From Schmidtea nova (taxonomy: Eukaryota): a DNA stretch of 64,000 nucleotides. The position numbers and the translations under genes were made by a program. Under the pieces are notes generated by a model. That model worked only from the letters and a program-made list of their open reading frames with translations. It did no database searches and was not told the origin of the DNA. Numbering within the stretch: position 1 is the first letter of the stretch; every line of letters starts with the position of its first letter. Shown here one piece after another: positions 1,616-51,408 of this stretch. The DNA lies in the NCBI GenBank assembly GCA_044892505.1, contig CM097882.1, forward strand, positions 183,024,001 through 183,088,000, read 5' to 3'.

Positions 1616-1639
1616 ATTTTTAAAAATTGCTGATTGATG

Positions 1640-6711: not shown

Positions 6712-6784
6712 TATTAAGAAAAATCAAAAATAAACATTTATTTAAAAAATATCTTCTTTCGTTGGTTAAAATTTTGCTTGTTGA

Positions 6785-18800: not shown

Positions 18801-21800
18801 CATCCATAATTGCAAAACAATACATCCAGACCATTCATTAACACCATCCATATCTAATATCACATGCAAAATTTATTTAACTACAATGCACACACTACAT
18901 CATTTCATTCAACCACATCCATAAAATTCACACAAGAAATTCATTCATTAGCATTCACCAGCATCATACATCCAGAAAATCCCACAAATACTCAATCTGT
19001 CACTTATTTCACCCAACACACTATCACATACATTCACAACAATAAAACACGCATTTCAAATCTATAATAGTATACATACACACAAACGTATAACCACTAC
19101 ATCTCATATCATATATTGTCAGAATTCATTTCAAAGCCACCTCATGTCAAAATTCAACACTTGCATCTCCTATCATGCCATTACCACCAGAATTTCATCA
19201 AGTCAAACATTTCAGACAATCTACATCCACGTTCAACCACATTATTCATATTGGATCACCTCACTCATAAAATGTCAGTTATTTATTTATAAAGAAGTAA
19301 AAATAATTTCAGTTAAAATAAAATAAATAACTACAAATGCAATATTTATTTTGCTAACGATCTTTATTAAAAAAGTAAATCAAAATTCCAACTAAAATAA
19401 AATCAATAATTGCAAAAAATGCAATATTTATTTTACTAATTAACTTTATTAGAAAGTAAATCAAAAGGTATTTGTCAATTGAAATTTGTGAAATTTCCGA
19501 TGAAAACGGACGATCTGATGAATCGATAAGGAGGTCAGAGTTGGCCACTGAAAGTTTTTTTTGTTTGTTGACTTTGCCATTTCCTGGATAAATTCCATTC
19601 AAAAGCAGAGACTCGTGTCGAGTTATTAAACGATTATTTTGGATAATACCAAATCCTACTCTAGACAATCCTGTCCACTTGTATTCTCATGGTCCTGTAT
19701 GTATTATAGATAGTCTCTTCAACAGTTGACGAATTATTGCACAAAACTTCAGGATCTTCGTTACATTTAGATGACACATAGTTTTTAAGAGATGAAATTA
19801 TGCTTTCTAAATTCCGCATTCAATTAAGAGGATAATAGCATAATTTTTAAGCAAGTTATTCAATCCCATTCCAACAGAAAGCAATAGCGGATGTTTCGTA
19901 GGAAGATTCGTAAATGATTATAAGTTCAGTTATTCCTTTAGAATTAAGTAACTCCATTAACAGTTTAGGATTGACATTTTTTTGTGAGAATGATTGAAAA
20001 CATTGATCCTAGCTTCCGCATTCAGATACTATGGAAGTAATTAATTTCTGTTTATCAATTTTAATTAATAAATTAACTTGTTTTTTGTCAATAAATAACC
20101 TTTTATGGAAAATTTGAACAAGATTTAATGAATTAGAACAATGAGTTCGCATGCATTTTCCAACCAAATGCTTAGAGGAATTGAGTAGAATTCAAACTTT
20201 TTGAAGGTCGAATAGAGTTTTAAACAAACGAAATATTATCGGTAATTCAAACAAAGAAAAATATTTATATATATAAAAATAGGGAAAAAACCAAATTAGG
20301 AAATAAAATTATTTTTGTAATTTAAAAATTAAGGTTTTATTTTTTTAGCAGATTAAATTTTTCTTTTAGAATGTTTTATCTAATGATTACCATAAATTTC
20401 AATATTAGCAAAATTTAATGTTTGGTTAGTGTTTTTGATGCTCGGAATGATTCATTTGGATTAGATAATAAATTTATATTGATGTAGAATATTTATGTTG
20501 AATTGCCGATAAAATTTTATTGAGTGTTTATAGATAAATCGTTGAAGAAGGAACAAAATGTGCATTAAACCTTCTATCGGTAGCCCTTGGACCCAGGAGA
20601 TATTCGGTCAATCATAGTTTCGAATTTTCGACGCTCACTGATTGCGAATACCCACCCATTTGTTGCATTACCAACGTTATATTGTGACGGGCAACAAGAT
20701 GGTTAATCTAATGTTTTGTATGTTGAGTTGTTGATGTGAGCCATAGCAACTTCAAATTCATATTGACGGTCAACAACCCACCAATAGGTAAAAATTAACT
20801 AAAAGAAAAGTTAATATTTAAAATATGCAAACGCAAGAAGTAAACACGGAAAAATCACAATCAAAACAAATTAACAAAAAACTGATAAAAGAATTAAGTA
20901 AATATTAAAATTCAGAAAATTTTATAAATTTTATTAGTATAAATGTAAAAAATGCAAAATTAAATTGTAAAAATTAAATTTAAAGCAGTTAAAATTTAAT
21001 TAAAATAAAAAAAATTGATAAATATAACATTTATGTAAACAATGAATAAAATTTTACACATAAATATAAATTTATTTTAGTAAAAATTAAATATTTAACT
21101 TTTAAAATAAATTAAATAAAAAGAACATTCTAGAAAATTTTGTTTTACTAAATCAATTAAATTAAATGGTCTGAAAATAGTTTACATAGCAGTGCTATTT
21201 TCAGTCATTTTATACACTTTTCGAAAAACTTGGTTTTTTAAAAACTCTTGTTTGAAAAAAATACTGTTTTTTAGTTTGAAAATACTTTTAGAAGGATGAA
21301 CTCTACAACTAAATCGATGAGTCATCGCAATGCAGAATTTTTAAGGAATGGCATCATTCTGTATATACCGAGTATGTCAGTTTGATGTTTTACCCATCCT
21401 ATTAATTTTATTTGGCACCCGCCAATGCCATGGTTACCTATGTTTATGCTCATTTATTATTTCTCTGACGAAATAAATGTTTCAAATAAAAAAAATTAAC
21501 TTTTTCTCGATAATTAATCAAAATTCTGCATACATAAAAAATGAAATTACTTTTGATTTTTTTGTTCATTTTCTTGACCTTCTCAGTAGCTAACTTCTTG
21601 TGGTATCCGAGCTTGTTGTGATGTAGATAGTGTTGGGCCCGCCAAATCACCTAAAAAACACAAGGAACGAACAAAAGCATGAAACAATAAAGAAATAATA
21701 AAAATAAAAATAGCAAGAAAAACAAATTAAAAATAACAATAAAACGACAAATAATAATTAATAAATTTTCAGTAAAAGGAAATTTTGAAATAAACCGGTA

Positions 21801-21980
21801 AACAACCGCAAAGGGGGGCCTGAAATAAGAAAAAATAGAATTAAATAAAATAATAGTGCAAATAATTAATTAATTACTTGGAAAATCAGGACCACCCAGC
21901 GAGAAACCGGAAAAGGAAACAAAATAATGTTTAGATTAGATTAAAATAATAAAAATACTTTGAAGGACGGTCTGATCCTG

Positions 21981-22015
21981 ATTGGTCAATCCAACCAGAC
22001 GGATCAGTATAAATA
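21981..22015 (+). promoter_or_regulatory. Putative LTR promoter: reverse CCAAT (ATTGG) and TATAAATA
   Basis: ATTGG at 21981 and TATAAATA at 22008-22015, between an inverted CTGATCC/GGATCAG pair. This implies a short U3 of about 400 bp and a very long transcribed R-U5. Confidence 0.5.
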
Positions 22016-23052
22016 CCGATCCAAAAATCACAGACTTAGACGTTTACTTTTCACTCACAATCAAGACTAAACTTTGATTTGAGTAAATTTTTGAAAAAAC
22101 CGAATTTCATGCAAGGAACCACACATTCAAGTACGGAAGTAATTTTTTATGTTATCTTATATGATGTACCCATGATTTTTATTTAATTAAAATCTTATAT
22201 GTAAACGTTATTTGATCTTATTTTTCCTTTTTGATATTTTAATGCATATAGTTATACTTCCTATGCTGCTCACGCGGCGAGGGAGTCCGAGTCGTCGTTG
22301 TGGGGCCTCACGGTCTCACATGGCGGTTCAACCTTTTTATTGTTTTGGTTTTCATATTTAATTTGGTAGTTGAAATAATTAAATTACATCATTCGAATTT
22401 AACTAGATATTTATCAGCGAGATTAGAGAATTTTAATGCTTATTTAGTCGAGTAAAATTTTCAGTCACGAAATATCGATAATGCGAATACGTCCAGACAG
22501 TTTTCTGGCAATAAGTAAAAAAGTCATCATTTGGTTGTACAGGGGACGTAGCGCAGCGGGCGGTAGAGAAGGTCTAAGGAGATACCAAGAGGGGGTAAAG
22601 TACCCGATAGGTGTCAGGTACCCGAGACAAATGGGTTGACACGCTGAGGTTAAATTTGAGGACGAGAGAGCAGGTATAGCATGACAAGTTATAAAAACTT
22701 TCCAAGTAAATCGATCAAACTGATGAATTTCAATTGAGGTCAAGGTACAGGATATCGCAACTGCATGACAGAGATTAGTAAGACTGAAAATCATAAATTC
22801 TAAAAATACTTTAAATTCCAGTCTAATAAAACTAAAAATCTGTAATTCTAAAAATACTTTTATGCCGATCGCTGTACATAGCGCGGTAGCTCAAAATAAT
22901 CTTATCCTGATCGTCGTACATGGCGCAGGGAAACAAATATCTTATCCGACCGTGGTATATCGCGGTGATGGTTTAAAAATGAGATGGTATTAACTAAAAG
23001 GATTGAGATTAAATAGAATTTACATTTAACTCTTTATTAAATAAAATGACAG

Positions 23053-23529
23053 ATGCTGACATCGTTGAACGAAAGATTAACGCGGATTCGGAACTCAGGA
23101 AAGGAGGACAGGGCGAATGAATGGGCAAATCAGCTCAAGGAGTTGCCCCAGCCAATTCTGCGGACCATTAACGCCCAAGCATACAAGTGGCGGCAAGGGT
23201 TTGGTCGAAAGTGCCCGTTTTCCATCTGGGACGGAGGAAACGATATAATACTCTATCGAGGAGGACCGAACTGGCCGATTTCTCAAAGGCCGTACTCAAA
23301 CAAATTTGGCCGACTTGTCGTACTGATCAAGGACACAGATGGACGGACAAGCCGTGTAATTTATTGGGGGCATATCCCTCGTCGGGAACTATGCCAACTA
23401 GGTCTACACGAATTCCTACCGCGAAAACCGTTCGGCAAGGAGTGCCAGAAGGGACAACCCTCATTCTCTTGGGCTCGTCTTCGTCAGAAACCGATTAACA
23501 GCGAATTGCATAGTTTGTTTCGGAGATGA
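23053..23529 (+). CDS. LTR-encoded hypothetical protein A (158 aa), also at 49679-50155
   Basis: ATG directly after CAG; intact in both LTRs; GC-balanced composition. No recognisable domain. Confidence 0.45.
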   Translation: MLTSLNERLTRIRNSGKEDRANEWANQLKELPQPILRTINAQAYKWRQGFGRKCPFSIWDGGNDIILYRGGPNWPISQRPYSNKFGRLVVLIKDTDGRTSRVIYWGHIPRRELCQLGLHEFLPRKPFGKECQKGQPSFSWARLRQKPINSELHSLFRR

Positions 23530-23715
23530 AAACTGATTAACAAATGTTGAAATTGTGTTAAAATATTAGAGTTCATTAGTGCATTTTTGTTTTGTTGTTT
23601 TGAGTTTTGGTTTTGTGTTTTTAATAGTTCGTATTGTAACCTAATAATCCTATAATCAAATTTTAATTTTTCACATAATTTAATCATAAAGTAAATATCC
23701 TAAATAAATTATAGA

Positions 23716-24336
23716 ATGACCACCGATTTGATACAGAGAGAATTGGAAAAGATGTGGCGGATCCGGAGAGCCCAGGACAAAGAATTGGGTCTCCTCAAGG
23801 CACAATTGATCAAAGCAGAGGCACAGATCGCATACTTGCGCAAAAGCTGGTTTGCTCCGGCCCGAATGAAGGAGCAAATCAGTAAAACCGAGCGCGCCCA
23901 ACAGACTGCAGCCGATTACCAAATGGAATGGGAGGCCACAAGGATAGAACTCCGAAAATGCCTCCATTCCGTAACTGCCTCATATATTGAGAAAGAGCTC
24001 AGAGAGCAAATCCGTCCGGTTACGTACCAAGCGTGGACATCAGAAAAGAAGACGGTAAATTCGATTGGCACGGATGTCGCCGATCTAATCGAAAGTCGGA
24101 ATGAGACAGCTCCTGCAGCAAATGCAACCACCTCATCGGCGAATGCGCACCAGAAACGCAAGCGCATTGGGCAGAAACGGCGAAGACAGAGGAAATTATT
24201 TGCCCAGCAATTACAAAGCCAAGTAGATGGTCTACATCAGATGACCGAGGAGGCATTATTGACGGAGATTTTCCCTCCGGCTGGAGTTTTTTTCGGAATT
24301 GATGAAAACTTAAATAAAATTTTCGTGTTAATTTAA
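23716..24336 (+). CDS. LTR-encoded coiled-coil protein with Arg/Lys-rich motif (206 aa), also at 50342-50962
   Basis: Heptad-like N-terminal half and a KRKRIGQKRRRQRK basic motif. TTATAG|A-ATG context; AATAAA at 24397. Confidence 0.7.
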   Translation: MTTDLIQRELEKMWRIRRAQDKELGLLKAQLIKAEAQIAYLRKSWFAPARMKEQISKTERAQQTAADYQMEWEATRIELRKCLHSVTASYIEKELREQIRPVTYQAWTSEKKTVNSIGTDVADLIESRNETAPAANATTSSANAHQKRKRIGQKRRRQRKLFAQQLQSQVDGLHQMTEEALLTEIFPPAGVFFGIDENLNKIFVLI

Positions 24337-24788
24337 AATTGTTATCGTTCTTTTAAATGGATTTAATTAACTTTACAAATGATTAGATAAAGATAGAATA
24401 AAAGTATAAACTCATTTTACAAAATACCTAATAGAGATAAATAAATAATTAAACGAGCATTTGTTGAAATACTTCTTGCAGAATGAGAGAGGTTAAAGAT
24501 AAATTTACTGAAAGATATTGCGGAACACCCAAATAGATGATTAAAGCATAAGTCCTTCTAACGGCAGCGATGAACCCGTAAACATAAATGGGGAGTAGTA
24601 CTAGCGATAGTGCTCACCTGCCCATCATTGTTTAACCACCCTGCGCATCACCAACTTGGTTATACAGGGAAATAATCAAGGGCGCTTGAGTGTAGAATTG
24701 CAATTTTGTGCATGATCATGGATGAGGGAATCCCTAGTCATTGTTAGAGCATTTTTCATCTAACCCCTCCATGAACCCAGCATAAATT

Positions 24789-24806
24789 TGGGGGCTCAGC
24801 CGGGAT
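24789..24806 (+). promoter_or_regulatory. Primer-binding site, tRNA-Pro-like
   Basis: TGGGGGCTCAGCCGGGAT, 6 nt after the LTR end; 16/18 identical to the tRNA-Pro PBS TGGGGGCTCGTCCGGGAT used by MLV. Confidence 0.85.
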
Positions 24807-25112
24807 CAACTTCGTTTTATCGGAAAAATGTAAACGTAAAATCTGCAGAGAGGTTTAAAATGCTCGGGTCAATTAATTTAATAAAAAACAGAAAGGTTAT
24901 AATTAAATATAAATTATTGTATAAAAATTAAATAAACAACACGGCAGTGAACAAAAGTGAATTTAGAAATTAAAATGCATGCATAATTTGTCGGGACGAC
25001 AATTTTCGGAAACACGGGGAGGATTGATAAATATCAAAGATACAAAACGAAACATATTACTACTTTAAAAATGATAAAAATAACAGAGTTAAAACGATTA
25101 TTTATTTAGTAA

Positions 25113-25574
25113 ATGGAGGAAAAACTGAAAGAAATTGAAGAATTTCTCAACACAGAAAGCGAAACATTAGAAACGATTGGCAAGAAAATAAACCGATTTA
25201 GAGAAATTGAATTTCAGGAACCCACAACACAGACTGAGGAAACAGAGGAATTAATAAAGATAACAGAGAGAACAAGAAAAATCGACATAAAGACCCGCTA
25301 CAAATGGTACAGAACACGATTAGAAAACGCAGAATTAAATATTAAGTGCAAGCAAATAGAACAACAATTAACCTCAACATACAATCAATGGAGGGCGCAA
25401 GGGGTAGAAGCAGCGAAAAAATACCGACAGTGCTATATATGTGGGGATAGCGAGATACAAATTATGTTTTTACCTTGCGGACATTTTCGTTTTTGTAAGA
25501 TATGTGCCAGCAAGTGCGACCTATGTCCTATGTGCAACCTGAGGATAGACGATAAAATTATTGTATATTTATAA
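25113..25574 (+). CDS. Coiled-coil plus C-terminal C3HC4 RING protein (IAP/MDM2-type RING)
   Basis: CYICGDSEIQIMFLPCGHFRFCKICASKCDLCPMCNLRI at the extreme C-terminus. No BIR motif seen. Confidence 0.85.
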   Translation: MEEKLKEIEEFLNTESETLETIGKKINRFREIEFQEPTTQTEETEELIKITERTRKIDIKTRYKWYRTRLENAELNIKCKQIEQQLTSTYNQWRAQGVEAAKKYRQCYICGDSEIQIMFLPCGHFRFCKICASKCDLCPMCNLRIDDKIIVYL

Positions 25575-26055
25575 TAAATAAATTTGAATGGAATTTTATT
25601 GGTTTATTAATGATGAAATCATGGGTACAATTGTCATATATAAATAATTTTTGAGCTACTGCAAAGTAGTCCGATAAGAATCCATTGGGAGGTACCGATT
25701 GATCAACCTAGTCAGGGTGTATAGAAAGGGGCCCATCGCAAATGTTGGAAAGTTTTTGTGATGTGATTGATCACCACATCCTGCATTAATGGACCAACGC
25801 GATCTTTTTGTATATTTTGGTTGGGGAGAGAGATAGGGAAATCTTGATGGAGTAAAGCGCGCACAGAGAAAAATAAATAAAAAGTTGAAGCAGACTGATC
25901 AGGAATTAGTTATGATAGAATAAAGAGATAAATGACAATTTTTGAAAGAATAAAAGGTGCATAGTCAGCTCGCATAGAAGTAGTTATAACTCAGCTGAGA
26001 AATTTTAATCGCTAGCGAAGTTAAGAATTGTGATTAACCGGTTAAATAAAGTTAG

Positions 26056-26433
26056 GAGATTTGTCCCTTGAAACAAAGGGTTATGAGATTTGTCCCTTGA
26101 AACAAAGGGTTAGGAGATTTGTCCCTTGAAACAAAGGGTTATGAGATTTGTCCCTTGAAACAAAGGGTTAGGAGATTTGTCCCTTGAAACAAAGGGTTAG
26201 GAGATTTGTCCCTTGAAACAAAGGGTTATGAGATTTGTCCCTTGAAACAAAGGGTTAGGAGATTTGTCCCTTGAAACAAAGGGTTATGAGATTTGTCCCT
26301 TGAAACAAAGGGTTAGGAGATTTGTCCCTTGAAACAAAGGGTTATGAGATTTGTCCCTTGAAACAAAGGGTTAGGAGATTTGTCCCTTGAAACAAAGGGT
26401 TATTAGCGGTTTGTCCCTTGAAAAAAAAGGGTT
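26056..26433 (+). repeat. Tandem array of a 29-bp unit, 12 near-perfect copies plus 1 degenerate
   Basis: GAGATTTGTCCCTTGAAACAAAGGGTTA[T/G], with no spacers. Confidence 0.95.
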
Positions 26434-26475
26434 GAGGCCAATGAGCCATATTGAATGACCTAGCTAGGCGTTATG

Positions 26476-26699
26476 GAGAGATTAAATTAAGGCCAAGAGA
26501 GCCATTTGAGAGATTAAATTAAGGCCAAGAGAGCCATTTGAGAGATTAAATTGAGGCCAATAGAGCCATTGGAGAGATTAAATTAAGGCCAAGAGAGCCA
26601 TTGGAGAGATTAAATTAAGGCCAAGAGAGCCATTTGAGAGATTAAATTGAGGCCAATAGAGCCATGTGAGATATAAAATTGAGGCCAGAAGAGCCATAG
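26476..26699 (+). repeat. Tandem array of a 32-bp unit, 6 near-perfect copies plus 1 degenerate
   Basis: GAGAGATTAAATT[A/G]AGGCCAA[G/T]AGAGCCATT[T/G]. Confidence 0.9.
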
Positions 26700-27308: not shown

Positions 27309-30300
27309 TTGAGAACAGGAGTAAAGAGTGTCGTAATAAAGCCAACAGAAAAGAAAGTCGGCAGTGAGAGCAATAAAAAAGACAAAACTAGTACTACAAC
27401 AAAAACAACAAAAAAGCAGAAAGCCGGCAAAGATAACAACAAGAACCCACAAGGGAGTAAAGCGAGGAAAATAATAAGAGATAAAGCGATTATCGAAAAC
27501 GATAAATTGTCAGTAGTAAGCAACAGTTCAAGTAACAAAGAAAACCAAGCAGAACCCAAAGAGAGCCAAACAAGTGAAATAGAAGTAGACGAAACTAATA
27601 ACGATAATATAGAAGAATTAGAGAGTGAAGTAGAACAAGAAGTAGAAATCAACGAGAGCGATAACGATAGTATAATATCAGATCACGAAGTAATAAGAGA
27701 AACAGAAAGCGATTCAAGCTCGAGTAAAACGGAAGACGAACATAACAACGAACTAGAAACAAGAGGAAACGAAAGTAAAATAACTCAAGACAGCGGAATT
27801 GAAATGGGTGAACCAAGAGAAGAAATAAAGGATAAATTTTCAGGAGAACCGTTTAACGGAGATGCGAGCAAATTAGAAACCTTTTTAAAAGAATTTGGCA
27901 TATTCGTGGAGGTATGCAAGTGGAAAGCTGAAACAACGGTAAGCAGAATTCAGTTATATTTGAAAGATAGTGCATTGGACCTATATTTGGAAGCGAAAAA
28001 TGGTACCAATCCACCTACAAGCTGGACAGCGATAAAGGATTTTTTCCAACAAACATTTGGAATAAATAAAGTGCTGAGCGAGGCATTCATAGAATTCTCA
28101 ATGAGGAAACAAAAGATGAATGAATCTAATGCGGTATACGCGAGCGAACTGAAAAAATTAGCAAAATCGGTATTCAAGGATGGAGGTCCAATAAACGAGG
28201 AGTTAATGGCAGCCATCTTCATAGGAGGATTAAGAAGACCCGACATAAGAGCACAAGTGGGATGTCAAGGATGCAAAACCATAGATCAAGCGTTAGAAAC
28301 AGCTAACCGATTTGAATTGCATATGATAGGAAGCGAAGGCAGAATTTATTTAGCCATGGACACAGCGCAAACCGAACCAGAAGTAAATCTCAACAATCAT
28401 ATTCCAAATTCGCAACAATTAAACCGACCACCCCCTCAACGAAGGAATGAAGGAAATAAAGTGCAGAACTTTGAAAATCAAAACAATTACAACCCTCAAA
28501 GACAAACAAAACAATGTAAAACATGCGGGAAGTTGGGACACTGGCAGCAAGAATGCTATCAAAATTTGAATTGCGGAAAATGTGGAGTCAAAGGACACTC
28601 GGAAAGCAGATGTTCTACAATAATCTGTTTTAATTGCGGACGACCTGGTCACTATTCAAGAAATTGCGGACAAAAAAGTAATCAACGAGGAAACTGGCAG
28701 AGTAATGGGAACCGACCAAATTACGGAAATCAAGCAAATACCGTAAACCGACCAGATTATGGGAACCAACAAGTCAATAATAACAATAATCAGAACAAAA
28801 CCACCCCCAAAGAAATACATTTAATGCAAGAAGTCCAAAGATTGACGGAACTTATAAACAATACGACGAGAGGAAATCCGCAAACCAATCAACAGCAAAT
28901 TAGCATGATGAGAAAAATAGAAAGCGAAAACGAACGATTGAATCGAGAAAGTCAAGCACGACACGCTCAGGAATGGGCAAGAATACAAAGAGAGGATGAA
29001 CAAAAACAGCAAGAAAGAGAACGACAACCTCTAAGAATTAACATGCTAAGAGCAACAAACCAAACAGACACTCGCGAGAAAGAAACCACACTGGAAATGA
29101 ATTCGATAGACCCGAATCCAGCCGACAACGAAAGTCGAAAAGAAATAGTACAAAAAGATGAAGAAGTAGAAAAAGAAGCAGAAAAGGGAGAGGAAACCGA
29201 GATAAACCAGGAAGAGAGAAGAAAAATTTGGAAAAAAGGAATGATGGTAATCATGCCCAACGACCATATGTTTCGATTCCAATATAACGCAAAAGAAAAG
29301 GTGGAAATACTGTTCAATAAAGTAAACCAGATGATTCCAGGAGTGACAAAACTGCCCAGAGAAGCGTTCTTACAAATAGGAGATGCACCATCAGTAAAAT
29401 TGAAATTAACGGATATATGGGAAAACATGGGAGTAGTAGAAACAAAAAGAAATGTGATGAGAATTAAAGAAATAGAACCAGAAGAAATACCACCACCAAT
29501 ACGTCACGAAACCCGAATCCGGCGAATATTTGAAGGAAAAATGATAAGAAGACGTTTAAAAGAGATAGACGAGTTGGGAAAGAAAATGGAAAAAGTCGAA
29601 GTAATAGAGGACAAGAGTGAACCAACACCAGAAATTGACAAAAACGAACCAGAACCAACGGAGAATATACAAGGAGAAACGAACCAAACAGCACATATTA
29701 ATATGTTAAGAAATACCACCAGAGAGTTTTCCGATGAAGAAGAAGATAGTGATATCAGTAGCCTAGCAGGAGACATATTAAACGAATCCGAAGACGAAAA
29801 TAAAGAGAGAGAAGTAATAAAGACCTCAGAACCTACACAGATAAAAGTAGATGAAATCCAGAAATTACTAGATAACTCGCTAGAAGTAATATATAACGAA
29901 GAGTTCATGGACAAGAAACAATATCGGAAATTCATGAAAGCATTATTACAAATGAACTACAAAGAATGGTTACAAGACCGGGAAGTAGACATGTTGAATC
30001 GATACGTAGGGAAATTAATAGAGGAACCACTTCTCAATTACACCATCTCAATAATAATAAATACATCTACACCAAGAATCTGGATCAAAACTCCATTTAC
30101 AGATGATATCTACAGATGGGTAGAGGACAGACTAGGGAGTTCATATAAAAACAAATTCATCTATTCGCAGAATAGACTCGTAAAGAAAAGAACGCACTTA
30201 GTAGAAACAGGTATATGGCCAGGAGAAATAACCCTATTATCAATATGTGATGAAAAGGAAGAAGAAAACCTACAAGAAGTTGCAAGGGAGGCAAACACGT

Positions 30301-32669: not shown

Positions 32670-32678
32670 GCCAAGAAT

Positions 32679-44282: not shown

Positions 44283-44406
44283 GGGCGGATTATGACTGTA
44301 AATAATAGTGTAAATAACAAAGCATTACCGTAATAGTATGGGTATCGATATTATAAAAATTGTAAAAAGCTAGAAAAACAAAGTAAATGATGTATATAAT
44401 TTAGAA

Positions 44407-44763
44407 ATGACCGAACAGGACGAAACAACTGAAATAACTATGGCTATGAGATGGAAGGCACAATGTGATTTATTAGTACGAACAGTCAACTCATTACAGA
44501 ACCAATTAGCGGAAAGACAAATGTTATTATCAGAGAGTTATAACAATTGTTTCGAACAATTACACAGAATAGAGGAACAACAAAGAGTGATAACTGAACT
44601 CACCAGAGAAAATCAAACGATAAGCAACACCAATCAAAGACAAGCAATAGAAATAAACCATTTAACACGAGGAGAAAGAGAAGGATCCGAAGAAGGATGG
44701 ATGAGTTGGGTAATAAATAGATTAAACAGCGAAGCGGAACCAGATTCAACGAATGAGCCATAG
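44407..44763 (+). CDS. Small coiled-coil protein (118 aa)
   Basis: Heptad-rich LVRTVNSLQNQLAERQ...LHRIEEQQRVITELTRENQ; TTTAG|AA-ATG context. Confidence 0.65.
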   Translation: MTEQDETTEITMAMRWKAQCDLLVRTVNSLQNQLAERQMLLSESYNNCFEQLHRIEEQQRVITELTRENQTISNTNQRQAIEINHLTRGEREGSEEGWMSWVINRLNSEAEPDSTNEP

Positions 44764-44856
44764 ATAAATAAAGCGGAAAACTGTAAATATGTAAAAATAA
44801 AAACAAGAAAAATCAAAAAATGAATGACAAGTCGAATGTATATATTATTGTAGAAA

Positions 44857-46233
44857 ATGGACAGAGAAGAACGAATCATCGAAATTTTGAGATTAGAAAA
44901 CAGAAAATGGAGTAAGAGGCTCACATGCGGGAAGTGTAACAATTTATTACGAGAACCCAGACAAACGATATGTGGATGTAGAATATGTACAAAATGTATA
45001 CAAGAATTGGATGCAACAGGAATAACAACATGCCCAGAATGTAAAGAAGGAGGAATAGTGTTGGACGAAACCAGAACGGACAAAGCAACCCAAAGAGAAA
45101 TTATGAGCACCACAACGGAGTGCGTAAATACACCTTGTACATGGCAAGGACAAATAAGTAATCTAGAAAACCATATGGAAAAATGCGAAGAAAAGAGAGC
45201 CGAATGCGAGAAGTGCCAACAGACAATAATTCTAAAGAAGAGAGAACAACACAAGGAAGAATGTAAAGAAGAAGAAATCGCATGCGAGTATTGTGAAGCC
45301 CGAGAAACAAGGAGAAAAATCGAAGAGGAACACTTGAATATAACAGAGGAGAAAGTATGCAGACAATATGTAAGTAAATGTCCAAACAATTGCGAAATAA
45401 CAGAAGAAGTAAAGTTACATGAACATTGGAAAGTATGTACCGAAAGACCAAGAGAATGTCCATATAACAAACAGGGATGCAAAGAAAAGCGGACGCGGCA
45501 ATCAATGAAACAACACCTAGAAGAAGCAGCACTAACGCATGTGGAAATGTCAAACGAAACGACAAAAGGAACGGAACAGACAATCCAGAAATTAGAAAAA
45601 GAAGTAGAATCACATAAGATAATGATGAGTTTACTACTAGAAACAAGAGAGCAGTTTGAACTAACTCGCGAAAAAATGGAAAAGAAAATAATAGCCATAG
45701 AAGAATTAGGAAAAGGAATGAAAATACAATATAATCAATTAATACGAGAAATTGACGAAAGAAGGGACTTACCAATCGCACCTTACCTATGGAAAGTAAC
45801 AGATTTCAGAGACAAACTAGCAGAAGCCAGAAATATGACGAAAACAGCAGTAATAAGCCCACCATTTTATTTATGGAAAAACGGGGTTAAAATAAGATTG
45901 AAAGTATACCCAAATGGAGACGGAAGAGGACAAGGAACACACGTGTCAATATTCTTCTCACTATGTAAAGGAGAATACGATGACCTAATAGAATGGCCCT
46001 TGAAAGTAGGAGTCATTATAAGAATCAAAAGTATGGGAAAACCAGTAGAAAAGTTCTTTGAAACAGATAAACATACCAGTACGAGCGAAAAACCCACAAC
46101 AGAATGCGGACTAGCAGCAGGAGAACCAATGTTTATAAGGAAAGAAAACCTATGGGAGCGACTATATGCAGACACGCTATACATAGAGATGGAGAGGCAT
46201 GAGAAAACAGACAGAAAAGGATGGTTGGCGTAA
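44857..46233 (+). CDS. TRAF-family protein (RING, TRAF zinc fingers, coiled coil, MATH)
   Basis: RING CGKCNNLLREPRQTICGCRICTKC..CPEC; CVNTPCTWQGQISNLENHMEKC; MATH WKVTDF..ISPPFY..RLKVYPNGDGRGQGTHVSIFFSLCKGEYDDLIEWP. Confidence 0.95.
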   Translation: MDREERIIEILRLENRKWSKRLTCGKCNNLLREPRQTICGCRICTKCIQELDATGITTCPECKEGGIVLDETRTDKATQREIMSTTTECVNTPCTWQGQISNLENHMEKCEEKRAECEKCQQTIILKKREQHKEECKEEEIACEYCEARETRRKIEEEHLNITEEKVCRQYVSKCPNNCEITEEVKLHEHWKVCTERPRECPYNKQGCKEKRTRQSMKQHLEEAALTHVEMSNETTKGTEQTIQKLEKEVESHKIMMSLLLETREQFELTREKMEKKIIAIEELGKGMKIQYNQLIREIDERRDLPIAPYLWKVTDFRDKLAEARNMTKTAVISPPFYLWKNGVKIRLKVYPNGDGRGQGTHVSIFFSLCKGEYDDLIEWPLKVGVIIRIKSMGKPVEKFFETDKHTSTSEKPTTECGLAAGEPMFIRKENLWERLYADTLYIEMERHEKTDRKGWLA

Positions 46234-46346
46234 TGAAGGAAGTGACCATGTAAATAAAATGTATAGAAACAATATAAATTAACGAATAATCAAAAACAAT
46301 AAAAATAAAAAATGATTAAATATTCTTTTTATCTGTAATTATAGAA

Positions 46347-47408
46347 ATGGGAAATATAGAAGTAACCTTACAAGAAGTAACAGTACATCAAGACGAAATG
46401 ATCAGAAATCACATGGAGCGGATTGGGATATGGATTCATGCCTATTATCGAAAACAGGAGGAATTGGAAAGACAAACCCAAGCACTAAGAGAAGCCGAGA
46501 AAACGAATCAAAGAAGTCGAGAAAAAATAGAAGAAGTCTACAAACTACTAAGACAACAAAACGAATACTACAAAGAGATGATGAAAGAGCGACGAGAGGA
46601 TAGGGATAGACAACAAATAAAAACAGACCATAAGATTCAGTCAATCACAGAACAATCAAGATATTGGAAGAAAGAGGCAAAAGACTCTTATAAGGAAGCA
46701 AGGGAGATAATAGAACGAACAGCGTACAGCGATGATTGGAAACTGTTTAAAGAGATCGATGAATTAAAAGAGGAATTAGGGCAAAAGATCAGTCAAGAAG
46801 CGTCAAATAAAGTATGGAGTAAGAAAAGACAACAATTTATCAGAGAACAAGCCAAGAAAATAAAAGAATTAACTTATCAAGTACAAAGAATGGGAGAAGA
46901 TTTAGCCAATCAAGAACAATTAAAAGGTATGCTGACCGGAATGTGGAATCACAAAGAAGAAAACATGAAAAGAGATATAAATGGATATCAAGGAGTGATC
47001 ACCCAGAAGAAAATAGAATTAAAAAGAACTAAAGAAAGACTGGAAGAAACGAGGCAGAGTTATGAAGAGAACATAACAAATTTGACAAAAGAAAACGAAG
47101 AACTGAGAAAGAAGTTGGCAGAAAAACCAACGCCAATAAAAGAAACAAGTATCACAGCAGCAGTGACCGAAATGATGGAGAAAGAAGAGAGAGAGAAAAG
47201 ATTAATGGAACTAGAAAGACAAATTGAAACCCTTACAGAACAAGCAAACTATTTGGAATACTTGTTAGACGAAGAGATCCAAATATCCCACACATACCGA
47301 GAAGAAGTCGAAATGTGGAGGAGCACGGTAATATGGATGCCACTCCCCATAAATCAGGTGGAACCTCAAGACGAAGGTTTTCACGAACCCAACGAAACCC
47401 TTGTATAA
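46347..47408 (+). CDS. Long coiled-coil protein (353 aa)
   Basis: E/K/Q/R-rich heptads throughout; no other motif recognised; TTATAG|AA-ATG context. Confidence 0.75.
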   Translation: MGNIEVTLQEVTVHQDEMIRNHMERIGIWIHAYYRKQEELERQTQALREAEKTNQRSREKIEEVYKLLRQQNEYYKEMMKERREDRDRQQIKTDHKIQSITEQSRYWKKEAKDSYKEAREIIERTAYSDDWKLFKEIDELKEELGQKISQEASNKVWSKKRQQFIREQAKKIKELTYQVQRMGEDLANQEQLKGMLTGMWNHKEENMKRDINGYQGVITQKKIELKRTKERLEETRQSYEENITNLTKENEELRKKLAEKPTPIKETSITAAVTEMMEKEEREKRLMELERQIETLTEQANYLEYLLDEEIQISHTYREEVEMWRSTVIWMPLPINQVEPQDEGFHEPNETLV

Positions 47409-47483
47409 ATGTGCGGAAACCAAGTGTAAATAAATTATGTAAAATAAAAAGTGTCAAGCTGTATTGACCGATGTATAAAAGAG

Positions 47484-48053
47484 ATGAGAAAGCTCGCAAT
47501 AACAACACTCCTATGGTTAACAACCATTACCCTACAGAGAGAAGATCTACAACTAACCGAAACCCAATTACGAGTGCTACCCGACAAAATCTACCAGAAA
47601 GTAGACATACTAATCGAAGAAGTACTTAGAGAAATCAACGAATTCCGACAGAAATACCCTCACAATCAAGATCATCAAATCCAACAAATCTTCGATAACC
47701 AACAACTGAAACTAGAAGAAACCCGAAAAATTCTGAAAGAAGGTAGAGAACCCATAAAAAGCCTATCCCAAGCTGAAATAGAATATCAAGAGAAATGGAT
47801 CATAGCAATCATCATAATCCTAGCAGTCAGCACAACTATCATCGCAATCACAATCCTAATTGCCTCATATAGAATAAAAATCCTAAAACAAAAGCAGAAA
47901 ATCTACAACCAAACCTCCAGACGAGATAACCGATCTCAAAGACAAATAAGGAGCCATCTCAATCACATTCAAACCCACTACGAGCTACAAATGATCAACG
48001 AGAGGACCCGAACCCAACCCCAAGCGAGCCAGACGATCGAACAAATTGTATAA
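47484..48053 (+). CDS. Putative type-I membrane protein (signal peptide, helical ectodomain, TM, basic tail)
   Basis: The track start 47451 is GTG; ATG 47484 gives MRKLAITTLLWLTTITLQ. TM WIIAIIIILAVSTTIIAITILIASY followed by RIKILKQKQK. Confidence 0.7.
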   Translation: MRKLAITTLLWLTTITLQREDLQLTETQLRVLPDKIYQKVDILIEEVLREINEFRQKYPHNQDHQIQQIFDNQQLKLEETRKILKEGREPIKSLSQAEIEYQEKWIIAIIIILAVSTTIIAITILIASYRIKILKQKQKIYNQTSRRDNRSQRQIRSHLNHIQTHYELQMINERTRTQPQASQTIEQIV

Positions 48054-48226
48054 ATATTATGATAACTTATCGAACTATTGTGACAAATCATTACATTTTG
48101 ACTATTTAGTGACAAACCTTATGATATGTATAAATTCGATCACCCTATGTGATTTTTTCTTTGCATGTATAACTTTATAAAACTTTTTATGGATGATGAA
48201 AATAAGTAGTTATGTATAATTAATTG

Positions 48227-48256
48227 CGGGACGCAATTTTAGGGGTCCCCGGGTGA
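48227..48256 (+). promoter_or_regulatory. Atypical polypurine-tract region before the 3' LTR
   Basis: CGGGACGCAATTTTAGGGGTCCCCGGGTGA|TGTTGGG: the usual Gypsy CGGGAC..AATTTT plus G-tract layout, interrupted by a palindrome. Confidence 0.5.
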
Positions 48257-51200
48257 TGTTGGGCCCGCCAAATCACCTAAAAAACACAAGGAACGAACAA
48301 AAGCATGAAACAATAAAGAAATAATAAAAATAAAAATAGCAAGAAAAACAAATTAAAAATAACAATAAAACGACAAATAATAATTAATAAATTTTCAGTA
48401 AAAGGAAATTTTGAAATAAACCGGTAAACAACCGCAAAGGGGGGCCTGAAATAAGAAAAAATAGAATTAAATAAAATAATAGTGCAAATAATTAATTAAT
48501 TACTTGGAAAATCAGGACCACCCAGCGAGAAACCGGAAAAGGAAACAAAATAATGTTTAGATTAGATTAAAATAATAAAAATACTTTGAAGGACGGTCTG
48601 ATCCTGATTGGTCAATCCAACCAGACGGATCAGTATAAATACCGATCCAAAAATCACAGACTTAGACGTTTACTTTTCACTCACAATCAAGACTAAACTT
48701 TGATTTGAGTAAATTTTTGAAAAAACCGAATTTCATGCAAGGAACCACACATTCAAGTACGGAAGTAATTTTTTATGTTATCTTATATGATGTACCCATG
48801 ATTTTTATTTAATTAAAATCTTATATGTAAACGTTATTTGATCTTATTTTTCCTTTTTGATATTTTAATGCATATAGTTATACTTCCTATGCTGCTCACG
48901 CGGCGAGGGAGTCCGAGTCGTCGTTGTGGGGCCTCACGGTCTCACATGGCGGTTCAACCTTTTTATTGTTTTGGTTTTCATATTTAATTTGGTAGTTGAA
49001 ATAATTAAATTACATCATTCGAATTTAACTAGATATTTATCAGCGAGATTAGAGAATTTTAATGCTTATTTAGTCGAGTAAAATTTTCAGTCACGAAATA
49101 TCGATAATGCGAATACGTCCAGACAGTTTTCTGGCAATAAGTAAAAAAGTCATCATTTGGTTGTACAGGGGACGTAGCGCAGCGGGCGGTAGAGAAGGTC
49201 TAAGGAGATACCAAGAGGGGGTAAAGTACCCGATAGGTGTCAGGTACCCGAGACAAATGGGTTGACACGCTGAGGTTAAATTTGAGGACGAGAGAGCAGG
49301 TATAGCATGACAAGTTATAAAAACTTTCCAAGTAAATCGATCAAACTGATGAATTTCAATTGAGGTCAAGGTACAGGATATCGCAACTGCATGACAGAGA
49401 TTAGTAAGACTGAAAATCATAAATTCTAAAAATACTTTAAATTCCAGTCTAATAAAACTAAAAATCTGTAATTCTAAAAATACTTTTATGCCGATCGCTG
49501 TACATAGCGCGGTAGCTCAAAATAATCTTATCCTGATCGTCGTACATGGCGCAGGGAAACAAATATCTTATCCGACCGTGGTATATCGCGGTGATGGTTT
49601 AAAAATGAGATGGTATTAACTAAAAGGATTGAGATTAAATAGAATTTACATTTAACTCTTTATTAAATAAAATGACAGATGCTGACATCGTTGAACGAAA
49701 GATTAACGCGGATTCGGAACTCAGGAAAGGAGGACAGGGCGAATGAATGGGCAAATCAGCTCAAGGAGTTGCCCCAGCCAATTCTGCGGACCATTAATGC
49801 CCAAGCATACAAGTGGCGGCAAGGGTTTGGTCGAAAGTGCCCGTTTTCCATCTGGGACGGAGGAAACGATATAATACTCTATCGAGGAGGACCGAACTGG
49901 CCGATTTCTCAAAGGCCGTACTCAAACAAATTTGGCCGACTTGTCGTACTGATCAAGGACACAGATGGACGGACAAGCCGTGTAATTTATTGGGGGCATA
50001 TCCCTCGTCGGGAACTATGCCAACTAGGTCTACACGAATTCCTACCGCGAAAACCGTTCGGCAAGGAGTGCCAGAAGGGACAACCCTCATTCTCTTGGGC
50101 TCGTCTTCGTCAGAAACCGATTAACAGCGAATTGCATAGTTTGTTTCGGAGATGAAAACTGATTAACAAATGTTGAAATTGTGTTAAAATATTAGAGTTC
50201 ATTAGTGCATTTTTGTTTTGTTGTTTTGAGTTTTGGTTTTGTGTTTTTAATAGTTCGTATTGTAACCTAATAATCCTATAATCAAATTTTAATTTTTCAC
50301 ATAATTTAATCATAAAGTAAATATCCTAAATAAATTATAGAATGACCACCGATTTGATACAGAGAGAATTGGAAAAGATGTGGCGGATCCGGAGAGCCCA
50401 GGACAAAGAATTGGGTCTCCTCAAGGCACAATTGATCAAAGCAGAGGCACAGATCGCATACTTGCGCAAAAGCTGGTTTGCTCCGGCCCGAATGAAGGAG
50501 CAAATCAGTAAAACCGAGCGCGCCCAACAGACTGCAGCCGATTACCAAATGGAATGGGAGGCCACAAGGATAGAACTCCGAAAATGCCTCCATTCCGTAA
50601 CTGCCTCATATATTGAGAAAGAGCTCAGAGAGCAAATCCGTCCGGTTACGTACCAAGCGTGGACATCAGAAAAGAAGACGGTAAATTCGATTGGCACGGA
50701 TGTCGCCGATCTAATCGAAAGTCGGAATGAGACAGCTCCTGCAGCAAATGCAACCACCTCATCGGCGAATGCGCACCAGAAACGCAAGCGCATTGGGCAG
50801 AAACGGCGAAGACAGAGGAAATTATTTGCCCAGCAATTACAAAGCCAAGTAGATGGTCTACATCAGATGACCGAGGAGGCATTATTGACGGAGATTTTCC
50901 CTCCGGCTGGAGTTTTTTTCGGAATTGATGAAAACTTAAATAAAATTTTCGTGTTAATTTAAAATTGTTATCGTTCTTTTAAATGGATTTAATTAACTTT
51001 ACAAATGATTAGATAAAGATAGAATAAAAGTATAAACTCATTTTACAAAATACCTAATAGAGATAAATAAATAATTAAACGAGCATTTGTTGAAATACTT
51101 CTTGCAGAATGAGAGAGGTTAAAGATAAATTTACTGAAAGATATTGCGGAACACCCAAATAGATGATTAAAGCATAAGTCCTTCTAACGGCAGCGATGAA

Positions 51201-51408
51201 CCCGTAAACATAAATGGGGAGTAGTACTAGCGATAGTGCTCACCTGCCCATCATTGTTTAACCACCCTGCGCATCACCAACTTGGTTATACAGGGAAATA
51301 ATCAAGGGCGCTTGAGTGTAGAATTGCAATTTTGTGCATGATCATGGATGAGGGAATCCCTAGTCATTGTTAGAGCATTTTTCATCTAACCCCTCCATGA
51401 ACCCAGCA
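48257..51408 (+). repeat. 3' LTR (3152 bp)
   Basis: Colinear copy of 21631-24782, followed by TSD ATAG. Confidence 0.97.

What the first reader, a model, noticed from the sequence alone, without database searches (positions are those of the whole stretch)
21631..51408. A 30-kb enveloped Gypsy retroelement carrying a cell-death and TNF-signalling toolkit
One recent insertion (near-identical LTRs, intact TSD) combines retrotransposition machinery with a viral-type glycoprotein, a Bcl-2-like domain, an IAP-type RING, a full TRAF, ankyrin repeats, ubiquitin-like modules and FN3-like surface proteins. Bcl-2, IAP, TRAF and ankyrin/IkB mimics are the known anti-apoptotic and immune-evasion arsenal of large DNA viruses, not of ordinary retrotransposons. 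Inference: a complex, possibly infectious errantivirus-like agent that keeps host cells alive. Giant Gypsy elements (Burro) are known in Schmidtea; I cannot tell whether this family or full architecture is already described.
Basis: partly seen in the sequence, partly recalled or inferred. Interest (0 to 1): 0.95.

Follow-up and report, generated by a model that had tools for sequence, protein, structure and literature searches.

The report
Giant Burro-type planarian Gypsy retroelement
This is a real, almost intact and very recently inserted 29.8-kb envelope-carrying Gypsy retroelement with TRAF, RING and ankyrin cargo, but it fits the "Burro" giant retroelements of planarians, whose unusual domain toolkit and possible viral nature are already published.

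Summary
The observation mostly holds. At 21631-51408 lies a 29,778-bp LTR element. It has two 3,152-bp LTRs differing at one base, TG..CA ends and a 4-bp target duplication. One reading frame of 5,656 sense codons carries gag, env and pol and is interrupted once, by an in-frame stop.

Profile and structure-database searches firmly confirm these parts:
- three CCHC knuckles
- a Monjiviricetes-type fusion glycoprotein (E 1e-71) lying between gag and pol
- protease, RT, RNase H and integrase of Ty3/Gypsy type
- two ankyrin blocks
- a BIR-less IAP-type RING gene upstream of gag
- a complete TRAF gene (RING, zinc fingers, MATH) downstream of pol

An FN3-like array in the pol tail is weakly supported. 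The Bcl-2-like and ubiquitin-like calls could not be confirmed here; the databases hold almost no relatives.

The architecture matches published descriptions of Burro/GYPSM1 (Jurka 2007; Grohme 2018; Arkhipova and Yushenova 2019). Those papers already list TRAF, RING/BIR, BCL2-like, SUMO-like, ankyrin and in-frame env, and already voice the provirus and apoptosis/ubiquitin "tinkerer" ideas. Sequence identity to Burro1-4 could not be tested. Pro-survival function and infectivity remain untested inference.

Verdict: real and striking, but already known.

The parts
21631..51408 (+). Whole element, 29,778 bp, flanked by a 4-bp target-site duplication (ATAG)
21631..24782 (+). 5' LTR, 3,152 bp, TG..CA; contains two ORFs (23053-23529, 158 aa; 23716-24336, 206 aa with a basic K/R stretch) with no family match
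24789..24807 (+). Candidate primer-binding site. It starts TGG, lies 6 nt after the LTR, and its complement looks like a tRNA 3' end. This is inference; the tRNA was not identified
   Evidence: no tRNA gene in the window
25113..25574 (+). Accessory gene upstream of gag: 153 aa, coiled-coil-like N-terminus and a C-terminal IAP-type RING; no BIR domain
   Evidence: Pfam zf-C3HC4_3 E 1.8e-11; XIAP/cIAP RING E about 1e-9; no BIR in the leader
26051..26697 (+). Two leader tandem-repeat arrays: 29-nt unit x13 and 32-nt unit x7
   Evidence: tandem repeats are also drawn in the published Burro figure
27309..44282 (+). gag-env-pol reading frame: 5,656 sense codons in one frame, one in-frame stop, no frameshift
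28515..28706 (+). Three CCHC zinc knuckles (nucleocapsid part of Gag)
   Evidence: Pfam zf-CCHC; retroviral NC chains in PDB; motif scan
30039..30803 (+). Two ubiquitin-like-looking modules (30039-30245 and 30561-30803), conserved with the only library relative P0001; unconfirmed
   Evidence: no Pfam or PDB hit
32166..32666 (+). Candidate Bcl-2-like helical domain at the end of the gag-side part; has a BH2-like GGW motif; unconfirmed
   Evidence: negative profile searches; AlphaFold pLDDT 45.6, all-helical; Foldseek not significant
32679..34778 (+). Env: own ATG, signal-peptide-like hydrophobic segment, ectodomain with 14 Cys, transmembrane anchor, short tail; continues in frame into pol
   Evidence: PF24664 Monjiviricetes_fusion E 9.5e-71; hydropathy; relative P0002
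35160..35432 (+). Retroviral aspartyl protease
   Evidence: Pfam RVP E 3e-7
36096..37148 (+). Reverse transcriptase and RNase H
   Evidence: RVT_1 E 7e-37, RT_RNaseH E 4.5e-38; Ty3 RT/RH 4ol8 E 1.5e-89; YIDD motif visible in the alignment
37473..37988 (+). Integrase (H2C2 zinc domain and catalytic core)
   Evidence: Integrase_H2C2 E 1.3e-19, rve E 1.2e-10; foamy virus integrase E 1e-25
38832..40175 (+). Two ankyrin-repeat blocks (38832-39131 and 39795-40175)
   Evidence: Ank_2 E 6e-15; designed ankyrin chains E about 3e-9
40899..42275 (+). FN3-like beta-sandwich array in the pol tail (weak support)
   Evidence: Pfam fn3 E 0.016; AlphaFold beta modules, best pLDDT 58-74; Foldseek top hits are tandem FN3 arrays, fibronectin FN10-12 E 7e-4, prob 0.99
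42519..44096 (+). Rest of the tail, with two transmembrane-like hydrophobic segments (42519-42596 and 44025-44096); no family match
44857..46233 (+). Complete TRAF gene (458 aa): RING, TRAF zinc fingers, coiled coil, MATH/TRAF-C; in a different frame from pol
   Evidence: MATH_2 E 6e-21, zf-TRAF E 1e-7; TRAF3 MATH E 1.9e-23 and TRAF6 RING-ZF E 2e-13
46347..47408 (+). 353-aa K/E-rich coiled-coil-like ORF, with only a weak Filament hit. It may be the kind of region behind the 'Smc' motif reported for GYPSM1 (inference)
47451..48053 (+). About 190-200-aa ORF with one transmembrane-like segment; no family match
48257..51408 (+). 3' LTR, 3,152 bp, one mismatch to the 5' LTR (synonymous in the LTR ORF it falls in)

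Best explanation
The feature is a full-length, very young copy of a Burro-type giant Ty3/Gypsy endogenous retrovirus-like element, of the kind described from dugesiid planarians.

Shown by the sequence: it has everything an LTR retroelement needs.
- near-identical LTRs
- a tRNA-type primer site
- Gag with three zinc knuckles
- protease, reverse transcriptase/RNase H and integrase with intact-looking motifs
- a class III-type viral fusion glycoprotein with a signal-like segment and a membrane anchor, placed between gag and pol in the same frame

Around and within this core sit host-like modules:
- a BIR-less IAP-type RING gene before gag
- ankyrin blocks and a probable FN3 array fused behind integrase
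- a complete RING-bearing TRAF gene
- a coiled-coil ORF and a small membrane-protein ORF after pol

Inferred, not shown:
- The element is transcribed from the 5' LTR.
- The polyprotein is cut by its own protease.
- The 3' genes are expressed from subgenomic or spliced RNAs.
- The RING, TRAF and ankyrin products, and possibly Bcl-2-like and ubiquitin-like ones, act on the host's ubiquitin, TRAF/NF-kB and cell-death circuits in the cells that express the element.
- The glycoprotein would let particles pass between cells. One possibility is transfer from differentiated tissue, where BURRO1 RNA is seen, to the PIWI-guarded stem cells that carry the lineage.
For: - Structure and youth: LTRs differ at 1 of 3,152 positions, with TG..CA ends and a 4-bp duplication.
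- Gypsy membership: PR-RT-RH-IN order, with Ty3 Gag-Pol the best solved relative at E 8e-120.
- Env: PF24664 at E 9.5e-71, plus a signal-like segment and a transmembrane segment. Its only library relative, P0002, is itself the env of another Gypsy-type element.
- Cargo: RING, TRAF, ankyrin, FN3-like.
- Match to the published Burro architecture (PMC6431247): total size about 30 kb, internal region up to 25 kb, three CCHC knuckles, env in frame between gag and pol, MATH_TRAF, RING, ankyrin, leader tandem repeats, and accessory ORFs that alternate with in-polyprotein domains.
- That alternation is seen directly. The relative P0001 has a MATH domain inserted in its polyprotein at the point where this copy has none. 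This copy instead has a separate TRAF gene.
- BURRO1 is reported as abundant, expressed in intestine and derepressed on smedwi-2 knock-down (PMC8532177).
Against: - Identity to the Burro1-4 or GYPSM1 reference sequences could not be tested. No repeat library is on hand and Grohme 2018 is not held.
- The host species is not known. Only the AT-rich, transposon-rich flanks fit a planarian.
- The BCL2-like, SUMO-like and dUTPase-like motifs published for Burro were not detected in this copy by Pfam or PDB sequence searches.
- The layout differs from the published Burro1 description. TRAF is a separate full-length gene 3' of pol, there is no BIR, and the frame is longer (5,656 against 4,873 codons).
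- The gag-env-pol frame carries one in-frame stop. It is a UAA with no stable downstream RNA structure, so programmed readthrough is not supported. How env-pol is translated in this copy is open.
- No evidence here bears on expression, particles or any effect on cell death.
Confidence: 0.88

Rival explanations
1. It is an undescribed lineage of giant planarian Gypsy elements, related to Burro but distinct from Burro1-4. Its own gene plan would be a RING-only gene 5' of gag, env-pol starting at its own ATG after a stop, an FN3 array and membrane segments behind integrase, a complete TRAF gene 3' of pol, and ORFs in the LTRs.
For: - The layout differs from the published Burro1 and Dugesia tigrina descriptions.
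- The only library relative of the gag-side region is 32% identical and has a different domain order.
- No homologues were found for the gag-side part or the pol tail.
Against: - Grohme 2018 already reports Burro-2, -3 and -4 with the same motif set. Their layouts could not be read here.
- The scarcity of relatives reflects the databases, which lack planarian repeat proteins. It is not evidence of uniqueness.
- Even if true, this would be a new member of a known kind.
Confidence: 0.3
2. It is a purely intracellular retrotransposon. The env and the cargo modules would be inherited baggage or decaying captures with no role in cell-to-cell transfer or in host signalling.
For: - No functional data exist for env or the cargo.
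- The in-frame stop ahead of env-pol could be a disabling mutation in this copy.
- The Bcl-2-like and ubiquitin-like regions are too diverged to score in profile searches.
Against: - All the long ORFs are open despite the strong stop density in the other frames.
- Env keeps its signal-like segment, cysteines and membrane anchor, and scores E 1e-71.
- RING and TRAF keep full domain sets.
- The same modules recur in different arrangements in relatives, which argues for selection to keep them.
Confidence: 0.15
3. It is an assembly chimera or a nested pile of several elements, not one element.
For: The genomic context is transposon-rich, with assembly gaps elsewhere in the window.
Against: - There are no N runs inside 21631-51408.
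- There is one pair of near-identical LTRs with a matching 4-bp duplication.
- All genes lie on one strand with uniform A-rich composition.
- There are no internal LTR pairs or second pol.
Confidence: 0.02

Closest known systems
[quoted passage not shown] 2018; reviewed in PMC6431247)
   Same: - Giant Gypsy-like LTR element of about 30 kb
- Gag with three CCHC knuckles
- Env-like fusion glycoprotein in frame between gag and pol
- PR-RT-RH-IN
- MATH/TRAF, RING and ankyrin motifs
- Leader tandem repeats
- Accessory ORFs
   Different: - Here TRAF is a complete separate gene 3' of pol, not a MATH domain inside the polyprotein.
- There is no BIR.
- The BCL2-like, SUMO-like and dUTPase-like motifs were not detectable with my tools.
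- The frame is longer and carries one in-frame stop.
- Sequence identity was not testable.
Burro-like element of Dugesia (Girardia) tigrina (PMC6431247)
   Same: A giant polyprotein, with the TRAF-type module encoded by a separate accessory ORF instead of inside the polyprotein.
   Different: There the accessory ORF is upstream; here the upstream gene is a RING and TRAF is downstream. The midasin-like homology reported there was not seen here.
GAG-ENV-POL errantivirus-like Ty3/Gypsy elements with gB-type (class III) env in Platyhelminthes, Nematoda and Bryozoa (PMC13524379)
   Same: The same gene order, with env between gag and pol, and a viral-type fusion glycoprotein.
   Different: No cell-death or TRAF cargo is mentioned in the passages of that paper that I read, which deal with gag, env and pol. 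I did not test the class III fold of this env by structure.
Insect errantiviruses (gypsy, ZAM) and mosquito BEL/Pao or Gypsy elements with chuvirus-like glycoproteins (PMC7642597, PMC13524379)
   Same: LTR retroelements that captured a viral envelope gene. From general knowledge, gypsy and ZAM use soma-to-germline transfer under piRNA control, which is the working model proposed here by analogy.
   Different: - Env is a separate ORF after pol.
- Elements are 7-10 kb.
- There is no host-signalling cargo.
Anti-apoptotic and NF-kB-modulating genes of large DNA viruses (viral Bcl-2, baculoviral IAP, poxviral ankyrin proteins)
   Same: The same kinds of host-derived modules carried by a mobile or viral genome. 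This is a resemblance in function only, recalled from general knowledge.
   Different: - Those are DNA viruses, not a retroelement.
- The RING gene here lacks BIR, so it is not an IAP.
- Bcl-2 is unconfirmed.
- No homology to any viral copy was found.

Membership tests
Ty3/Gypsy (Metaviridae) LTR retroelement | Paired LTRs with TG..CA ends and a short target-site duplication | tested here: met
   3,152-bp LTRs, 1 mismatch, 4-bp duplication
Ty3/Gypsy (Metaviridae) LTR retroelement | Pol domain order PR-RT-RNase H-IN, with RT/IN closest to Ty3-type enzymes | tested here: met
   Pfam order; Ty3 Gag-Pol 7q5b E 8e-120
Ty3/Gypsy (Metaviridae) LTR retroelement | Gag with CCHC nucleocapsid knuckles | tested here: met
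   Three knuckles. The Pfam capsid (Retrotrans_gag) model did not hit
Burro giant planarian Gypsy elements | Total length about 30 kb or more, internal region up to 25 kb | tested here: met
   29,778 bp total, 23,474 bp internal, against the published figures
Burro giant planarian Gypsy elements | Env-like fusion glycoprotein in the same frame between gag and pol | tested here: met
   PF24664 E 9.5e-71, upstream of PR in the same frame
Burro giant planarian Gypsy elements | MATH/TRAF, RING (AIR1/BIR-type) and ankyrin motifs | tested here: met
   BIR itself is absent in this copy
Burro giant planarian Gypsy elements | BCL2-like, Ubi2/SUMO-like and dUTPase-like motifs (found by HHpred in the literature) | tested here: inconclusive
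   No Pfam or PDB sequence hit. There is a BH2-like motif and a helical model only. My tools lack profile-profile search against domain libraries and there are no relatives to build alignments from
Burro giant planarian Gypsy elements | Sequence similarity to, or phylogenetic grouping with, Burro1-4/GYPSM1 reference sequences | not testable with these tools
   No repeat library is available and Grohme 2018 is not held. The one relative, P0001, is unnamed
Burro giant planarian Gypsy elements | Host is a dugesiid planarian | not testable with these tools
   The source is not given. Flanks of 24-36% GC, mostly below 30%, and rich in transposons are compatible. Exact-protein look-ups found nothing
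Env-carrying (errantivirus-like) Gypsy elements | Glycoprotein with signal peptide, ectodomain homologous to a viral fusogen, and membrane anchor | tested here: met
Env-carrying (errantivirus-like) Gypsy elements | Formation of particles and transfer between cells | not tested
   No sequence tool can show this. A functional test lies outside what this report may propose
TRAF proteins | N-terminal RING, TRAF-type zinc fingers, coiled coil, C-terminal MATH/TRAF-C | tested here: met
IAP proteins | At least one BIR domain | tested here: not met
   Only the C-terminal IAP-type RING is present. There is no BIR hit in the ORF or the leader
Bcl-2 family | Bcl-2 helical bundle with BH motifs recognised by a family profile or by fold | tested here: inconclusive
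   Profile, PDB and library searches were negative. The model has pLDDT 45.6 and the Foldseek hits to Bcl-2/Bcl-xL have E 2-4 only
Fibronectin type III domains | Seven-strand beta sandwich recognised by profile or fold | tested here: inconclusive
   Pfam E 0.016, below the curated cut-off. The model is low-confidence, but the top 16 Foldseek hits, and most of the top 50, are FN3 arrays, best E 5e-4 to 7e-4

The most novel reading that the evidence does not exclude
This copy may stand for a Burro lineage whose gene plan has not been described in detail. The plan would be env-pol opened by its own start codon and signal peptide after a stop that ends a Gag/Bcl-2-like protein, a complete E3-competent TRAF and a BIR-less IAP RING as separate genes, an FN3 array with membrane segments fused behind integrase, and coding ORFs inside the LTRs. 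Together these would make a complex-retrovirus-like genome in a flatworm, using its envelope to move from differentiated cells into stem cells.
Probability: 0.25. Interest if true: 0.5.

Novelty: already known. Interest (0 to 1): 0.3.

Why it matters
Burro-type elements are the largest LTR retroelements known. They are abundant in planarian genomes, hamper assembly, and are derepressed when somatic PIWI is lost. A retroelement that carries an envelope gene plus TRAF, RING, ankyrin and possibly Bcl-2-like modules is a natural case of a retrovirus-like agent equipped to interfere with host ubiquitin, NF-kB-type and cell-death signalling, in an animal whose stem cells are its germline.

That question is still open experimentally, but it was raised in print in 2007, 2018 and 2019. 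This window adds a clean, near-intact example and some details of layout, not a new kind of thing.

Tried and rejected
Searches that found little or nothing:
- Word-indexed homologue searches with the gag-side protein and with the pol tail found nothing. The env search found one protein.
- The exhaustive HMMER search of 1.84 billion representatives with the 1,200 residues that end the gag-side part found one unnamed relative. It found no Bcl-2 or ubiquitin family member.
- Exact-sequence look-ups of the TRAF, RING and LTR ORFs and of P0001 found no contigs.
- Scans of viral and metagenome contigs with alignments found no relatives.
- The Rfam and tRNA scans of the window were empty.

Structure prediction:
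- Both AlphaFold jobs had to run without alignments and gave low confidence (pLDDT 45.6 and 45.4).
- The Bcl-2 fold search was therefore uninformative.
- The FN3 result is only suggestive.

Ubiquitin-like modules:
- A two-sequence profile and a plain search against solved structures found no ubiquitin-like chain.
- A four-module profile would have needed typed sub-sequences of P0001, so I left it out.

Rejected readings:
- Programmed stop-codon readthrough between the gag side and env-pol. The stop is UAA, and the downstream RNA folds no better than shuffles (z = +1.3).
- An assembly chimera.
- Calling the RING gene an IAP, because there is no BIR.

Other points:
- Grohme et al. 2018 could not be read, so Burro-2 to -4 layouts are known to me only through PMC6431247.
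- The alignment tool printed consensus lines on its own.

Full report

Yes, at exactly the stated coordinates.
- A fixed-offset comparison shows two direct repeats, 21631-24782 and 48257-51408. Each is 3,152 bp, and they are identical at 3,151 of 3,152 positions.
- They begin TG and end CA, and are flanked on both sides by the same four bases, ATAG.
- The element is 29,778 bp long with a 23,474-bp internal region, and it contains no N runs.
- Six bases after the 5' LTR lies a 19-nt stretch starting TGG. Its complement looks like a tRNA 3' end, so it is a candidate primer-binding site. This is an inference; no tRNA gene lies in the window.
- If both LTRs were identical at insertion, one difference in 3,152 bases puts the insertion very recently. 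I give no date because the host mutation rate is unknown to me.

**2. Coding content**

All long ORFs lie on the + strand, which is A-rich (44% A, 18.5% T).
- From 27309 to 44282 a single frame of 5,656 sense codons is interrupted once, by an in-frame stop. It has no frameshift.
- Over 27309-48050 the other two + frames carry 682 and 419 stops. The openness of this frame is therefore not a by-product of low T content.

Pfam and PDB sequence searches give the following, in order along the element:
- Upstream of gag, a 153-aa gene whose C-terminus is an IAP-type RING. Pfam zf-C3HC4_3 scores E 1.8e-11, and the XIAP and cIAP RING chains score E about 1e-9. It has no BIR domain, in the ORF or elsewhere in the leader.
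- Two tandem-repeat arrays in the leader.
- Gag with three CCHC knuckles that match retroviral nucleocapsids.
- A long gag-side extension with no family match.
- A fusion glycoprotein, PF24664 'Monjiviricetes_fusion', E 9.5e-71. It covers most of the profile in two stretches. It has its own ATG, a signal-peptide-like hydrophobic segment, 14 ectodomain cysteines and a strong transmembrane segment.
- In the same frame: aspartyl protease, reverse transcriptase, RNase H and integrase. The Ty3 Gag-Pol polyprotein is the best solved relative at E 8e-120.
- Two ankyrin blocks.
- A tail of about 1,370 codons with no family match.
- After pol: a 118-aa ORF, then a complete TRAF. Its RING and zinc fingers match TRAF6/5/2, and its MATH domain matches TRAF3 at E 1.9e-23.
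- A 353-aa K/E-rich coiled-coil-like ORF, then an ORF of about 190-200 aa with one membrane segment.

Each LTR also holds two ORFs, of 158 and 206 aa. The longer one has a K/R-rich stretch, and neither has any family match.

**3. The three doubtful cargo calls**

*Bcl-2.*
- The last 170 or so codons of the gag-side part end in a GGW-containing stretch that looks like a BH2 motif by eye.
- Every search was negative: Pfam, phmmer against all PDB chains even at E up to 10, and an exhaustive HMMER search of 1.84 billion representatives.
- The single-sequence AlphaFold model is all-helical but poor (pLDDT 45.6).
- Foldseek gives only non-significant rows. A few Bcl-2/Bcl-xL chains appear at E 2-4.
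- Verdict: inconclusive.

*Ubiquitin-like modules.*
- Two blocks, 30039-30245 and 30561-30803, have a beta-grasp-like pattern.
- They are conserved with the one library relative, P0001 (32% identity over about 540 residues).
- Neither Pfam nor PDB searches, single-sequence or two-sequence profile, return any ubiquitin-like protein.
- Verdict: inconclusive.

*FN3.*
- Pfam fn3 gives a sub-threshold hit at E 0.016.
- It falls on the best-predicted beta module (pLDDT 58-74) of an otherwise poor model of the tail.
- The top 16 Foldseek PDB hits, and most of the top 50, are tandem FN3 arrays. Examples are fibronectin FN10-12 (E 7e-4, probability 0.99) and anosmin-1.
- Verdict: weakly supported. The array is followed by a membrane-like helix.

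The dUTPase-like motif reported between PR and RT in Burro was not detected here.

**4. What it is**

The domain order, the Ty3 affinity and the LTR anatomy make it a Ty3/Gypsy element. Its size and its odd features fit the Burro family.

Arkhipova and Yushenova (PMC6431247) summarise Jurka's GYPSM1 (2007) and the Burro1-4 elements of Grohme et al. (2018):
- Gypsy-like elements of Schmidtea mediterranea exceeding 30 kb, with internal regions up to 25 kb, in thousands of copies.
- A giant polyprotein with a Gag and three CCHC knuckles.
- MATH_TRAF_C, a RING-type motif and BIR, ankyrin repeats, BCL2-like, Ubi2/SUMO-like and dUTPase-like motifs.
- An env-like region with hits to mononegavirus fusion glycoproteins, lying in frame between gag and pol.
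- Tandem repeats in the leader.

[quoted passage not shown] I see that directly. P0001 carries a MATH domain inserted in its polyprotein at the point where this copy has none, and this copy has a separate full TRAF gene instead.

The same paper states the provirus hypothesis and the idea that Burro tinkers with apoptosis and ubiquitination. A later survey describes GAG-ENV-POL Gypsy elements with class III (gB-type) env in Platyhelminthes (PMC13524379). The only library relative of this env, P0002, is itself encoded next to a Gypsy pol on a metagenome contig.

**5. How it most likely works**

Shown: the parts list of a replication-competent-looking LTR retroelement with an envelope gene and host-like signalling modules.

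Inferred:
- Transcription starts in the 5' LTR, and reverse transcription is primed by a tRNA.
- The element's protease processes the polyprotein.
- The 3' genes are expressed from subgenomic or spliced RNAs.
- The RING, TRAF and ankyrin products act on host ubiquitin and TRAF/NF-kB-type signalling.

The direction of any effect on cell death is open. A RING without BIR cannot do what defines an IAP, and Bcl-2 is unconfirmed.

The single in-frame stop sits at the junction of the gag-side part and env. It is a UAA, and the downstream RNA folds no better than shuffles, so programmed readthrough is not supported. Whether it is this family's normal gene boundary, with env-pol translated from its own ATG, or a private mutation cannot be told from one copy.

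BURRO1 RNA is reported in intestinal cells and rises when SMEDWI-2 is depleted (PMC8532177). By analogy with insect errantiviruses, the envelope could serve transfer from differentiated cells to stem cells. This is a hypothesis.

**6. Novelty and verdict**

The family, the toolkit and the interpretation are all in print.

I could not test identity to Burro1-4 (no repeat library; Grohme 2018 not held). A residual chance therefore remains that this is an undescribed lineage with its own layout. That would be a new member of a known kind.

The FN3-like array, the LTR ORFs and the complete RING-bearing TRAF are details I did not find mentioned in the papers I could read.

**7. Surroundings**

The element sits in transposon-rich, AT-rich DNA.
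- A second, ordinary Gypsy element lies on the minus strand at 53363-58392. It is 5,030 bp, with 305-bp identical LTRs and a 5-bp duplication. Its pol is 31% identical to the giant element's.
- A further Gypsy fragment runs off the window's end.
- A decayed hAT transposase lies at 12650-14165.

**8. Rule compliance**

Queries ended at stops. The consensus lines printed by the alignment tool were not used. I list the break by kind and count only. A functional test of infectivity is referred.

Noticed in passing
window 53363-58392 (minus strand): A second, ordinary-sized Gypsy element of 5,030 bp. Its 305-bp LTRs are 100% identical and it has a 5-bp target duplication (GTGCG). It carries a gag ORF with a CCHC knuckle (57048-58127) and a 1,105-aa PR-RT-RH-IN pol (53665-56982). 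It also looks very recent. Its pol is only 31% identical to that of the giant element.
   Followed up: partly
window 62190-63781 (+ strand, runs towards the window end): Another Gypsy-type fragment: ORF pieces with aspartyl protease and reverse transcriptase hits, preceded by a weak PHD/FYVE-like zinc-finger hit.
   Followed up: no
window 12650-14165 (+ strand): A decayed hAT-family transposase: DUF4371 and the hAT C-terminal dimerisation domain, in two overlapping frames.
   Followed up: no
window 23053-23529 and 23716-24336 (repeated at 49679-50155 and 50342-50962): Two ORFs inside each LTR. The 206-aa one is longer than chance readily gives in 3 kb. It has a coiled-coil-like N-half and a K/R-rich stretch that could be a nuclear-targeting or nucleic-acid-binding segment. 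It has no family match. Whether it is a real accessory gene is open.
   Followed up: partly
window 26051-26433 and 26476-26697: Two adjacent tandem arrays in the leader between the RING gene and gag: a 29-nt unit x13 (95% matches) and a 32-nt unit x7 (93% matches). Function unknown. Tandem repeats are also drawn in the published Burro maps.
   Followed up: no
window 1007-1529 versus 52835-53363: A repeat of about 530 bp at 80% identity. One copy abuts the left end of the small Gypsy element. It is probably another dispersed repeat family.
   Followed up: no
window 20823-20897 versus 52726-52800: A 75-nt A-rich direct repeat at 71% identity, one copy on each side of the giant element. It is probably low-complexity or a dispersed repeat, not part of the element.
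   Followed up: no
window 6554-6713: A 160-bp segment that matches its own reverse complement at 86% (a palindromic repeat), next to an assembly gap.
   Followed up: no
L001 (ENA metagenome contig, 16,231 bp) 3-7255: The only library relative of the env (P0002, PF24664 E 2.6e-90) lies directly 3' of a Gypsy-type RT-RH-IN pol. This is a POL-ENV retroelement from an unknown eukaryote in a metagenome.
   Followed up: partly
protein P0001 (UniParc UPI00060E6093, 882 aa): An unnamed protein with a Burro-like gag-side region, 32% identical to this element. It carries a MATH/TRAF-C domain inserted where this element has none. Its source organism is unknown.
   Followed up: partly
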